From IMG/VR virus record IMGVR_UViG_3300024252_000004, positions 186,001 to 250,000 of that record: a DNA stretch of 64,000 nucleotides; one strand, given 5' to 3'. Of the stretch, positions 28,608 to 28,775 are shown one piece after another. A model generated the notes under the pieces. It saw only the letters and a list, made by a program, of their open reading frames with translations, had not been told where the DNA came from and did not search any database. How positions within the stretch are numbered: the first letter of the stretch is position 1; the number at the start of each line of letters is the position of its first letter. A program made the translations under genes and the position numbers.

Positions 28608-28775
28608 TGGGGAAACGTAGGTAGCTCAGTCTGGTAGAGCGCGGGTATATACGCCCGGTCGCCGCAGGTTCGAATCCTGTCCTGTGGGTGGATAAAGTAT
28701 GGGCGAAGGAAGCGAGAGGGAAGTAGTACATTAGTACCTCTCGTTAGTAAGCAAACAGAAATTGAAGCCTCCCCA
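28608..28775 (+). ncRNA. YrlA-like RNA directly downstream of the vWA gene
   Basis: canonical D and T arms (TAGCTCAGTCTGGTAGAGC, GCAGGTTCGAATCCTGT), 6-nt anticodon loop, no CCA; ends pair (TGGGGA/TCCCCA); TTGAAGCCTC shared with RNA A. Confidence 0.68.

What the first reader, a model, noticed from the sequence alone, without database searches (positions are those of the whole stretch)
28608..28775. YrlA-like RNA immediately after the vWA gene
Seen: it starts 8 nt after the stop codon and has perfect D and T arms, a 6-nt non-decoding anticodon loop, a weak acceptor helix and no CCA. A 3' extension holds a CGAGAGG/CCTCTCG hairpin, and the ends pair beside TTGAAGCCTC, which also occurs in RNA A. 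Established: YrlA genes lie next to Ro60 genes. This is independent support for the Ro-like call.
Basis: partly seen in the sequence, partly recalled or inferred. Interest (0 to 1): 0.66.

Follow-up and report, generated by a model that had tools for sequence, protein, structure and literature searches.

The report
Non-decoding tRNA mimic beside Ro-like gene
A huge phage carries, right after a gene for a distant look-alike of the RNA-surveillance protein Ro60, a conserved ~170-base RNA shaped like a tRNA that cannot decode; it is a plausible partner RNA for that protein but is not a member of the known YrlA family.

Summary
Window 28608-28775 holds a tRNA-shaped domain (28615-28688; Rfam tRNA 37.4 bits; ARAGORN 'tRNA-???') with a 5-bp stem and 6-nt loop in place of an anticodon arm, a mismatched first acceptor pair and no CCA. 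A 3' extension follows, with an 8-bp hairpin, and a terminal helix joins the two ends before a U-run. The only distinct homologue found (L078, a 405-kb phage) keeps all 32 modelled pairs, with 6 double compensatory changes. The 3' extension is 90% identical; the neighbouring gene is 79%.

It is not YrlA. The Rfam YrlA model finds nothing, and the arm order is D-anticodon-T, not YrlA's T-acceptor-D. It looks more like Deinococcus Yrn1, which also has a 6-nt loop. A GGCGAAG word matches the proposed Ro-binding motif, but chance could give it.

The upstream protein has no TROVE sequence match. Predicted-structure searches nevertheless rank Ro60 proteins first, and protein-language-model features point to TROVE. 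This protein family marks the 3' edge of tRNA arrays in about 70 huge phages.

Best reading (0.42): a Y-RNA-like tRNA mimic that works with the Ro-like protein. Binding and expression are untested.

The parts
26720..28600 (+). 626-aa protein: N-terminal helical domain with a Ro60/TROVE-like predicted fold, plus a C-terminal vWA domain with an intact MIDAS site (D430-x-S432-x-S434)
   Evidence: Pfam finds only VWA_2 (26.2 bits) and no TROVE. AF2 model pLDDT 80.7. Foldseek PDB top 11 hits are all Ro60/TROVE. N-terminal domain alone: Ro60 proteins at ranks 1-3. ESM features nearest to TROVE clusters. MIDAS residues are invariant in 35 homologues.
28608..28613 (+). 5' strand of the terminal (closing) helix, UGGGGA
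   Evidence: Pairs with 28770-28775. Four pairs are in register in L078, two of them changed on both sides (G-C to A-U, A-U to C-G).
28615..28688 (+). tRNA-shaped domain. Acceptor 28615-28621 / 28681-28687; D arm 28624-28640; 5-bp stem with 6-nt loop 28642-28657; T arm 28664-28680. U8, A14, G15:C48, G18G19 and the T-loop UUCGAAU are all kept.
   Evidence: Rfam tRNA 37.4 bits. ARAGORN 'tRNA-???'. The 6-nt loop length is kept in L078 although the loop sequence differs (AUAUAC vs CGUUAA), with two double compensatory changes in the stem. The closest tRNA in the window is tRNA-Arg(CCU) at 7870-7940 (50 bits with model R1).
28689..28711 (+). Nearly invariant single-stranded linker carrying GGCGAAG (28702-28708), which matches the GNCGAAN0-1G word proposed as the Ro60 contact in bacterial Y RNAs
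   Evidence: Sequence. Motif defined in Chen 2014. The word is frequent: 48 plus 30 matches in the 64-kb window, both strands, which gives about a 10% chance of one in a stretch this long.
28712..28744 (+). 8-bp hairpin GCGAGAGG / CCUCUCGU with a 17-nt invariant loop
   Evidence: Two pairs changed on both sides in L078 (C-G to U-A, G-C to A-U), none broken.
28745..28769 (+). Invariant linker UAGUAAGCAAACAGAAAUUGAAGCC; overlaps the first eight bases (28762-28769) of TTGAAGCCTC (28762-28771)
   Evidence: Alignment A5. The 3' extension 28689-28769 is 90% identical to L078, against 79% for the vWA gene DNA. A second exact TTGAAGCCTC lies at 25019-25028.
28770..28775 (+). 3' strand of the terminal helix, UCCCCA
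28776..28782 (+). C plus U6 run directly after the terminal helix; a likely 3' end (terminator-like). L078 has CUUCUUUU at the same place.
   Evidence: Sequence. Not flagged by the simple terminator scan, which needs a loop of 3-8 nt.

Best explanation
It is a phage-encoded, tRNA-derived non-coding RNA of about 170 nt that serves as a Y-RNA-like partner of the Ro60-like protein encoded just upstream.

Shown:
- The RNA folds into a junction of three elements: a terminal helix made by its two ends; a tRNA-shaped domain that keeps the nucleotides tRNAs use for their tertiary contacts; and an 8-bp hairpin.
- Invariant single-stranded linkers join these elements.
- The tRNA-shaped domain cannot decode, because its loop has 6 nt and the loop sequence is not conserved. 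As encoded, it is also unlikely to be aminoacylated, because the first acceptor pair is an A-G mismatch and there is no CCA.

Inferred:
- It is transcribed with, or just behind, the Ro-like gene and ends at the terminal helix plus U-run.
- The Ro-like ring binds the terminal-stem and linker module, including the GGCGAAG strand. This is by analogy with Ro60 contacting GGUCCGA or GNCGAA in known Y RNAs.
- The tRNA-shaped module is presented to a tRNA-handling enzyme or exoribonuclease, such as PNPase, RNase P or Z, or a modification enzyme.
- The resulting particle would then act on structured RNAs or tRNAs during infection by a phage that itself carries 44 tRNA genes.
For: 1. Real structure under selection. 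All 32 pairs are kept in the only distinct homologue, with 6 double compensatory and 4 one-sided changes; slid controls give 0-1. The 3' extension is more conserved (90%) than the coding DNA beside it (79%).
2. The 6-nt loop is kept while its sequence is free. Selection therefore acts on shape, not on an anticodon.
3. D. radiodurans Yrn1, a proven Ro60 partner, is described with the same arm order, a 5-bp 'anticodon' stem and a 6-nt loop (PMC4201824).
4. The Y-like RNAs that bind phage phiLo Ro60 were picked out by a 5'-3' stem, an internal region with CGAA, and hairpins (PMC12135203). This RNA has all three.
5. Known Y RNAs lie within 4 kb of Ro60 on the same strand. This one starts 8 nt after the stop codon.
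6. The protein looks Ro60-like. Foldseek E-values are 2.8e-8 to 2e-5 for ranks 1-11, all Ro60/TROVE, including phage phiLo Ro60. The N-terminal domain alone has Ro60 proteins as its top three. A phage 'Ro-like RNA binding protein' is rank 3 in BFVD. ESM features point to TROVE.
7. The protein family is tied to tRNA genes. Across 68 distinct loci there are 390 tRNAs in 248 kb upstream and 33 in 258 kb downstream.
8. Other non-canonical tRNA-like RNAs follow the same gene in L047 (z -4.67) and L052. A 6-nt-loop tRNA-like lies 145 nt upstream of it in L009.
9. The closest relative also has an RNA with true YrlA topology 2.7 kb upstream of the Ro-like gene (37.3 bits, E 1.5e-5).
Against: - There is no binding or expression evidence.
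- The protein has no TROVE sequence signal in Pfam for any of 35 family members, in a six-frame scan of the genome, or in a profile search against PDB sequences.
- The structural matches have low TM-scores (0.34-0.49) and high rmsd, and Z 9 is modest for a helical repeat protein.
- The same gene is in conserved synteny with a 309-aa protein, a JAB peptidase and a ThiF/E1-like enzyme, which allows a non-Ro role.
- The RNA was found in only two distinct genomes.
- In L078 a 127-aa ORF sits between the gene and the RNA.
- In most related phages the next gene starts directly after the vWA stop.
- GGCGAAG lies in the middle of the RNA, not near the 5' end as in YrlA, and has about a 10% chance of occurring at random.
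- The region is rich in other odd tRNA-derived RNAs, so adjacency may only reflect that.
Confidence: 0.42

Rival explanations
1. It is a tRNA-shaped processing module that acts in cis, independently of the Ro-like protein. RNase P, and possibly RNase Z, cut at the tRNA-like domain. That would define the 3' end of the upstream mRNA a few bases after its stop codon and release a stable 3' small RNA, in the way mascRNA is released from MALAT1.
For: - In both genomes the RNA starts 8-10 nt after the stop of whichever ORF lies upstream: the vWA gene in the window, a 127-aa ORF in L078.
- No sigma-70-like promoter was found between the gene and the RNA.
- L047 has a tRNA-like element about 20 nt after the same gene's stop.
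- M. smegmatis YrlA is cut by RNase P at a 7-bp acceptor-like stem (PMC4201824), so such domains are substrates.
Against: - It does not explain why the 3' extension is the most conserved part (90%), nor why the terminal helix ties the 5' leader to the far 3' end with compensatory changes.
- It does not explain a maintained anticodon-like arm with exactly 6 loop bases.
- It is compatible with the main explanation and may be only one step of it.
Confidence: 0.25
2. It is a decoy or sponge tRNA mimic. It would titrate a host tRNA-targeting defence nuclease or another tRNA-binding factor and so protect the phage's own tRNAs.
For: - The phage invests heavily in tRNAs: 44 tRNA genes plus a tmRNA gene.
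- The tRNA-shaped domain keeps the tertiary-contact nucleotides.
- Several acceptor-less or loop-altered tRNA-like RNAs lie in the same region.
- From my own knowledge, not checked here: phage tRNAs with altered anticodon loops have been reported to escape anticodon nucleases.
Against: - Anticodon nucleases read the loop sequence. Here the loop differs completely between the two phages (AUAUAC vs CGUUAA) while its length is kept.
- The idea gives no role to the conserved 3' extension and terminal helix.
Confidence: 0.13
3. It is a decaying tRNA pseudogene, perhaps derived from the phage's tRNA-Arg, followed by an unrelated conserved terminator or untranslated region.
For: - The domain is most similar to the window's tRNA-Arg(CCU) (50 bits with R1).
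- It has a low tRNA score (37.4 bits), a weak acceptor stem and a defective loop.
- The window's copy of another tRNA-like element (25375-25450) has fallen below detection, while its counterpart in L078 still scores 44.9 bits.
Against: - Drift would break pairs, but none of 32 is broken at about 26% divergence in the tRNA-like part.
- The anticodon-like stem shows two double compensatory changes, and the odd 6-nt loop length is retained in both genomes.
- The 3' extension evolves more slowly than the neighbouring gene.
Confidence: 0.08
4. It is a true member of the YrlA family.
For: - It lies next to a Ro-like gene on the same strand.
- It has D-like and T-like arms.
- It contains a GNCGAAG word.
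Against: - The Rfam YrlA model gives no hit at E<=10 locally, none at E<=1 in the window, and at best 15 bits in the genome. The same model does find a full-length candidate in L078:1188-1302, so it has power in this group of phages.
- The arm order is D-AC-T, not T-AS-D.
- The acceptor-like stem is open, not closed by a loop.
Confidence: 0.02

Closest known systems
Deinococcus radiodurans Yrn1 (Y RNA bound by the Ro60 orthologue Rsr)
   Same: As described in PMC4201824, Yrn1 has a tRNA-like module with the D-like arm, an 'anticodon arm' and a T arm in normal tRNA order. The anticodon-like stem has 5 bp and the loop has 6 nt rather than 7. The 5' and 3' ends pair, and the gene is encoded beside the Ro60 gene.
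   Different: - No sequence or covariance-model similarity was shown here, and Rfam gave only tRNA hits.
- Yrn1's Ro-binding helix keeps both conserved strands; this RNA has only a short 4-6-bp terminal helix.
- This RNA has a full acceptor-like stem, a variable region, and an 81-nt 3' extension with its own hairpin.
YrlA (Rfam RF02553), bacterial and mycobacteriophage Y RNA-like A
   Same: A non-decoding tRNA mimic with conserved D and T arms, no free CCA, encoded within 4 kb of a Ro60 gene on the same strand. It carries a GNCGAA word thought to contact Ro60.
   Different: - YrlA is circularly permuted relative to tRNA: T arm, closed acceptor-like stem-loop, D arm. Its two ends lie on the anticodon-stem side.
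- In YrlA the motif is near the 5' end.
- This RNA fails the covariance model.
Yrl1 and Yrl2 of Thermus phage phiLo (bound by phage Ro60; PDB 9KOP, 9L5Y)
   Same: Phage-encoded RNAs next to a phage Ro60 gene. They were recognised by a 5'-3' stem flanking an internal region with CGAA, plus hairpins (PMC12135203). phiLo Ro60 is the best Foldseek match of the protein here.
   Different: - The phiLo RNAs lie upstream of the gene and are not described as tRNA-like.
- phiLo Ro60 is a recognisable Ro60 homologue found by a database search; the protein here has no TROVE sequence match.
Ordinary phage tRNA genes (Rfam RF00005)
   Same: The cloverleaf arms and tertiary-contact nucleotides are present, it scores above the tRNA gathering threshold, and it probably descends from a tRNA-Arg-like gene.
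   Different: It has a 6-nt loop with no conserved anticodon, an A-G mismatch at the first acceptor pair, no CCA, and a conserved 3' extension that pairs back to the 5' leader.

Membership tests
YrlA (RF02553) | Scores at or above the family's covariance-model gathering score (69 bits) | tested here: not met
   No YrlA hit at E<=10 in 25000-29000 or at E<=1 in the whole window. The best score in the own genome is 15.4 bits. The same model gives 37.3 bits over its full length in L078:1188-1302.
YrlA (RF02553) | Permuted tRNA-like topology: T arm, then a closed acceptor-like stem-loop, then the D arm | tested here: not met
   The order here is acceptor 5' strand, D arm, anticodon-like arm, T arm, acceptor 3' strand (Rfam tRNA alignment over positions 1-71). 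YrlA topology is from PMC4201824 and from the consensus structure line.
YrlA (RF02553) | GNCGAAN0-1G motif near the 5' end | tested here: inconclusive
   GGCGAAG is present at 28702-28708 in a block that is invariant between the two genomes, but it lies 95 nt from the 5' end. The word occurs 48 plus 30 times in the window.
YrlA (RF02553) | Encoded within about 4 kb of a Ro60 orthologue on the same strand | tested here: inconclusive
   It starts 8 nt after the stop of the 626-aa gene on the same strand. That gene is Ro60-like only by predicted fold and language-model features, not by the TROVE profile.
Y RNA in the broad sense (Ro60-bound RNA) | A terminal stem formed by the 5' and 3' ends | tested here: met
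   UGGGGA pairs with UCCCCA. Four pairs are in register in L078, two with changes on both sides.
Y RNA in the broad sense (Ro60-bound RNA) | Conserved bulged Ro-binding helix (GGUCCGA-type strand with its partner) | tested here: not met
   No such helix is present in either sequence; there is only the GGCGAAG word in a linker.
Y RNA in the broad sense (Ro60-bound RNA) | Physically bound by the Ro60 protein | not testable with these tools
   This needs co-immunoprecipitation or a gel-shift assay. Complex prediction handles only protein partners.
tRNA (RF00005) | Covariance-model score above gathering (29 bits), with a cloverleaf | tested here: met
   37.4 bits over model positions 1-71. The L078 copy scores 46.0 bits.
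tRNA (RF00005) | A 7-nt anticodon loop with U33 and a usable anticodon | tested here: not met
   Both genomes have a 6-nt loop: AUAUAC and CGUUAA. ARAGORN reports 'tRNA-???'.
tRNA (RF00005) | A chargeable acceptor end (7 pairs, discriminator base, CCA encoded or added after trimming) | tested here: inconclusive
   Six of seven pairs form, with an A-G mismatch at pair 1-72, and GUGG follows rather than CCA. Trimming and CCA addition cannot be excluded without RNA data.
Ro60 / TROVE protein (for the neighbouring gene) | Match to the TROVE profile (PF05731) | tested here: not met
   No hit for the protein or for any of 35 homologues at E<=1. None in a six-frame scan of the genome at E<=10, where the controls Deinococcus and Bacteroides were found. 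The profile search against PDB sequences found no Ro60.
Ro60 / TROVE protein (for the neighbouring gene) | Helical-repeat ring followed by a vWA domain with a MIDAS site | tested here: inconclusive
   The vWA domain with MIDAS is clear (Z 16; DxSxS invariant). For the N-terminal domain, Ro60 proteins are the top matches in three searches, but with TM 0.34-0.49, Z 7.8-9.1 and high rmsd. The model also has a beta-rich insert at residues 35-98, which I do not recall in Ro60 (not checked here).

The most novel reading that the evidence does not exclude
A very divergent Ro60-like family, with no TROVE sequence signal, may be a core gene of a 'tRNA island' in hundreds of uncultivated huge phages. 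It sits at the 3' edge of tRNA arrays and upstream of a 309-aa protein, a JAB peptidase and a ThiF/E1-like enzyme. Its partner RNAs would be lineage-specific, non-decoding tRNA mimics, including ones with a 6-nt 'anticodon' loop as in Deinococcus Yrn1. That would be a new, independently evolved class of Y-like RNAs serving phage tRNA quality control or the capture of host RNA-decay enzymes.
Probability: 0.25. Interest if true: 0.75.

Novelty: new variant of a known kind. Interest (0 to 1): 0.55.

Why it matters
Ro60-Y RNA particles are known in animals, in about 5% of bacteria and in a few phages. Their Y RNAs are hard to find by homology, and what the tRNA-like modules do is still open.

If this RNA binds the neighbouring protein, three things follow:
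- The Ro60-Y RNA system would extend to a large group of huge phages in which neither partner is recognisable by sequence.
- There would be a second example, besides Deinococcus Yrn1, of a Y RNA built on a normal-order tRNA fold with a 6-nt loop.
- The system would be linked directly to phage tRNA arrays, pointing to tRNA surveillance or hijacking of host RNA decay.

If it does not bind, it is still a cleanly supported new structured RNA, though one restricted to a narrow phage lineage.

Tried and rejected
- Rfam YrlA or any Y RNA family: no match in the window or in the own genome. YrlA hits elsewhere that cover only model positions 24-84 are tandem-tRNA artefacts, as Chen 2014 warned.
- More homologues of the RNA. 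Three exact-pattern scans of IMG/VR with conserved blocks found only the same genome plus chance matches inside coding regions (L084, L085, L087). A two-block pattern in the metagenome contigs found only identical copies (L088, L089). Covariance model R1, run over 74 sources, found full-length matches only in the window and L078; everything else was an ordinary tRNA hit through model positions 13-83.
I did not try another route, and read laying was not used.
- Thermodynamic significance of the whole RNA: z -0.67 and 0.02, not significant.
- Sequence link from the protein to Ro60: phmmer and a profile search against PDB sequences, Pfam on 35 members, and PHROGs were all negative.
- The ESM Atlas shape search with the N-terminal model returned only the protein's own family and weak unrelated rows.
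- The VIA second look at the full-length model was swamped by vWA domains.
- GenBank phages: only one record carries the protein (Virus Rctr197k, 52% identity, 'conserved hypothetical'). Megablast of the locus found nothing.
- My own regex scan for 6-nt-loop tRNA-like elements across the loci was too noisy to use.
- The large representative-protein search was not run. The family is so populous that its own members would fill the 150-row list.

Full report
**What is there**

The window is part of a 395-kb virus record and spans positions 186001-250000 of it. The genome has 44 tRNA genes and a tmRNA gene.

The 626-aa ORF at 26720-28600 ends with TAA at 28598-28600.
- A tRNA-shaped domain lies at 28615-28688. 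Rfam tRNA scores it 37.4 bits against a gathering score of 29, and ARAGORN calls it 'tRNA-???'.
- The D stem is perfect (GCUC/GAGC).
- The T arm is GCAGG-UUCGAAU-CCUGU.
- A 5-bp stem (CGGGU/GCCCG) closes a 6-nt loop, AUAUAC.
- The acceptor stem is ACGUAGG/CCUGUGG, with an A-G mismatch at the first pair and two G-U pairs. There is no CCA.
- The nucleotides that build the tRNA L-shape are present: U8, A14, G15 with C48, G18G19 and the T-loop.
- Then come a 23-nt linker, an 8-bp hairpin (28712-28744), a 25-nt linker, and UCCCCA (28770-28775). UCCCCA pairs with UGGGGA (28608-28613).
- CUUUUUU follows the terminal helix. After it come the ribosome-binding site and the GTG start of a small zinc-ribbon ORF.

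**Is it more than chance?**

Folding energy alone says nothing: z is -0.67. Comparison does.

The closest relative of the upstream protein (P0002, 83% identical) lies on a 405-kb ENA scaffold, fetched as L078. The same RNA is at L078:6260-6433.
- On a 32-pair structure, every pair forms in both sequences.
- Six pairs changed on both sides: two in the terminal helix, two in the anticodon-like stem and two in the hairpin.
- Four more pairs changed on one side and still pair. Structures slid by 1-3 columns give 0-1 double changes.
- The anticodon-like arm is only 44% identical, yet it keeps 5 pairs and exactly 6 loop bases (AUAUAC vs CGUUAA).
- The 3' extension is 90% identical. The tRNA-like domain is 74% and the vWA gene DNA is 79%.

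This is an RNA selected for its shape and for the sequence of its 3' extension. It is not a decoding tRNA and not a decaying pseudogene.

**How widespread is it?**

It is narrow. Pattern scans of IMG/VR and of the metagenome contigs, and a covariance model (R1) run over 74 sources, found full-length copies only in the window's own genome (L086, L088 and L089 are identical) and in L078.

In L078 a 127-aa ORF sits between the vWA gene and the RNA, and the RNA again begins a few bases after that ORF's stop. In L079 and L080 (67% and 62% protein identity), and in most of the 77 IMG/VR loci, another gene follows the vWA gene directly.

The tRNA-like part is closest to the phage's own tRNA-Arg(CCU), which suggests where it came from.

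**Is it YrlA?**

No.
- The Rfam YrlA model finds nothing at E<=10 around the locus, nothing at E<=1 in the window, and only about 15 bits of noise in the genome.
- The model does have power in this phage group. It gives a full-length 37.3-bit match (E 1.5e-5) at L078:1188-1302, with the true YrlA order of T arm, closed acceptor-like hairpin, D arm.
- That RNA and the 687-aa ORF behind it are absent from the window's genome.
- Chen et al. 2014 define YrlA by this permuted order and by a GNCGAAN0-1G word near the 5' end (PMC4201824). The RNA here has normal tRNA order and an open acceptor stem.

The same paper describes D. radiodurans Yrn1 as having the other orientation, with a 5-bp 'anticodon' stem and a 6-nt loop. 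That is what is seen here.

The word GGCGAAG occurs at 28702-28708 in an invariant linker. It is short and common in this genome, which works out at about a 10% chance of one in a stretch of this length, and it is not near the 5' end.

By the looser criteria used for phage phiLo Yrl1 and Yrl2 (a 5'-3' stem, an internal region with CGAA, hairpins; PMC12135203), this RNA would pass.

**Is the neighbouring protein Ro-like?**

Sequence evidence says no. There is no TROVE hit for it or for 35 homologues, none in a six-frame scan of the genome, and none in a profile search of PDB sequences.

Predicted structure says probably yes.
- The AF2 model has pLDDT 80.7.
- Foldseek against the PDB ranks eleven Ro60/TROVE chains first, with E from 2.8e-8 to 2.3e-5 and alignments of 525-574 columns. 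vWA-only hits come after them.
- The N-terminal 422 residues were modelled alone (pLDDT 82.8) and aligned to 48,161 representative chains. The top three are Deinococcus Rsr (Z 9.1), phiLo Ro60 (Z 9.0) and Xenopus Ro (Z 7.8). The next hit is Z 5.8.
- BFVD puts a Gordonia phage 'Ro-like RNA binding protein' at rank 3.
- Language-model features of residues 1-422 are nearest to TROVE and DUF2828 clusters, with scores of 0.82-0.86.

TM-scores are low and rmsd values high, and the model has a beta-rich insert at residues 35-98. I rate Ro60-type ancestry at roughly 0.7-0.8, not proven. The C-terminal vWA domain is clear, with an invariant MIDAS site.

**Context that bears on function**

The protein family has more than 1,600 members, on contigs of up to 600 kb. 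In 68 distinct loci, ARAGORN finds 390 tRNAs in the 248 kb upstream and 33 in the 258 kb downstream. In 19 of the 60 loci with at least 3 kb upstream, a tRNA lies within 300 nt. The gene therefore marks the 3' edge of tRNA arrays.

Downstream there is conserved synteny with a 309-aa protein that has no Pfam match, a JAB peptidase and a ThiF/E1-like enzyme, in 73, 64 and 47 loci respectively. In the window these lie at 31001-31936, 33671-34030 and 35980-36549. From my own knowledge, E1-like and JAB proteins take part in tRNA thiolation pathways in Thermus and archaea. That would fit a tRNA-centred island, but it also leaves room for a role of the vWA protein unrelated to Ro.

Non-canonical tRNA-like RNAs recur next to this gene.
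- L047 has a 14-bp stem enclosing D-like and T-like hairpins about 20 nt after the stop (z -4.67).
- L052 has an acceptor stem, a D arm, a 5-bp stem with a 6-nt loop, a ~125-nt insertion, a T arm and a U-run. This was read by eye.
- L009 has a 6-nt-loop tRNA-like 145 nt upstream.
- The window has a tRNA-like core at 25605-25735 held in a long stem made by its flanks, with four compensatory pairs against L078.

**Mechanism and rivals**

My best reading (0.42) is a Y-RNA-like partner. The Ro-like ring would bind the terminal-stem and linker module, and the tRNA mimic would recruit a tRNA-handling enzyme or an exonuclease.
- Shown: the structure, the tRNA mimicry, the adjacency and the fold similarity.
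- Inferred: binding, processing and function.

The rivals are:
- a processing module recognised by RNase P and RNase Z, which fits the constant 8-10-nt distance from the upstream stop codon but not the conserved extension (0.25);
- a decoy for tRNA-targeting factors, weakened by the unconserved loop (0.13);
- a pseudogene plus terminator, contradicted by the covariation (0.08);
- true YrlA membership, refuted (0.02).

The remaining ~0.10 is left for readings not listed here.

**Limits**

There are only two distinct sequences. No profile-profile test against TROVE was possible. The L052 structure was read by eye.

**Verdict**

This is a genuine new structured RNA. It is a new variant of the phage Ro60-Y RNA theme rather than a YrlA family member, and it is moderately interesting. 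The larger lead is the protein family and its tie to tRNA arrays.

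Noticed in passing
window 25605-25735 (homologue L078:130-260): A tRNA-like core (Rfam tRNA 50.1 bits, but only model positions 5-66, with a 3-bp acceptor stem) sits on a long two-part stem formed by its own 5' and 3' flanks (UCCCCGUCC/GGACGGGGA and UCAAUCU/AGAUUGA). Four pairs show compensatory changes against L078. It is another Y-RNA-like architecture, about 1 kb upstream of the Ro-like gene.
   Followed up: partly
window 25857-26012 (L078:397-542): A tRNA with an intact anticodon arm (anticodon AUG) and an insertion of about 83 nt between the anticodon arm and the T arm. The insertion has its own small hairpins and is conserved in the relative. Similar insertion-bearing tRNAs occur in L009 and L052.
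   Followed up: partly
window 24992-25127: An RNA with tmRNA/tRNA-style ends (GGGGCUG ... CGGCCCCACC), a T arm, a GAA anticodon-like arm and a ~65-nt insertion after the 5' acceptor strand. It holds the second exact copy of TTGAAGCCTC (25019-25028).
   Followed up: partly
window 25265-25338; L004, L015, L026, L041, L044-L046, L054, L056, L057: tRNAs with A at position 34 (Asn-AUU here; Asp-AUC, Val-AAC, Ile-AAU, His-AUG and Tyr-AUA in relatives) recur close to the vWA gene. This is unusual for bacteria and phages, and it hints at A-to-I editing or special decoding.
   Followed up: no
window 26720-36549; 68 distinct related loci: The vWA/Ro-like gene marks the 3' edge of tRNA arrays (1.57 tRNAs per kb upstream, 0.13 per kb downstream). 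It is followed in conserved order by a 309-aa protein with no Pfam match (window 31001-31936), a JAB peptidase (33671-34030) and a ThiF/E1-like enzyme (35980-36549).
   Followed up: partly
L078:1188-1302: An RNA with true YrlA topology (T arm, closed acceptor-like hairpin, D arm; Rfam YrlA 37.3 bits, below the gathering score of 69). It lies 30 nt upstream of a 687-aa ORF with no Pfam match. Both are absent from the window's genome.
   Followed up: partly
L047:5961-6036; L052:~6001-6205; L009:3785-3856: Other non-canonical tRNA-like RNAs lie directly beside the same gene in distant huge phages. One is a mini form without an anticodon arm. One has a 6-nt loop and a ~125-nt insertion. One is a 6-nt-loop form 145 nt upstream of the gene.
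   Followed up: partly
window 25062, 25259, 25631, 25963; L009:3495-3790; L052:3130-3730: A recurring word, roughly (A)GCYUACAAGC, lies just before D arms or T arms and at the 3' end of the tRNA insertions. It appears in unrelated huge phages and may be a processing or recognition signal.
   Followed up: no
window 22170-22630: A group I intron (Rfam 72.2 bits, E 2e-16) just upstream of a radical SAM gene (23132-24646). Its host gene was not examined.
   Followed up: no
own genome outside the window: G000 302460-302537 and 325213-325615: ARAGORN finds a tRNA with anticodon CUA (an amber suppressor, labelled Pyl) and a tmRNA gene. The suppressor raises the possibility of TAG recoding in part of this phage. 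No alternative genetic code was used in this work.
   Followed up: no
window 29328-29993: A PP2C-type protein phosphatase gene, conserved in L078 and L079, lies downstream of the RNA.
   Followed up: no
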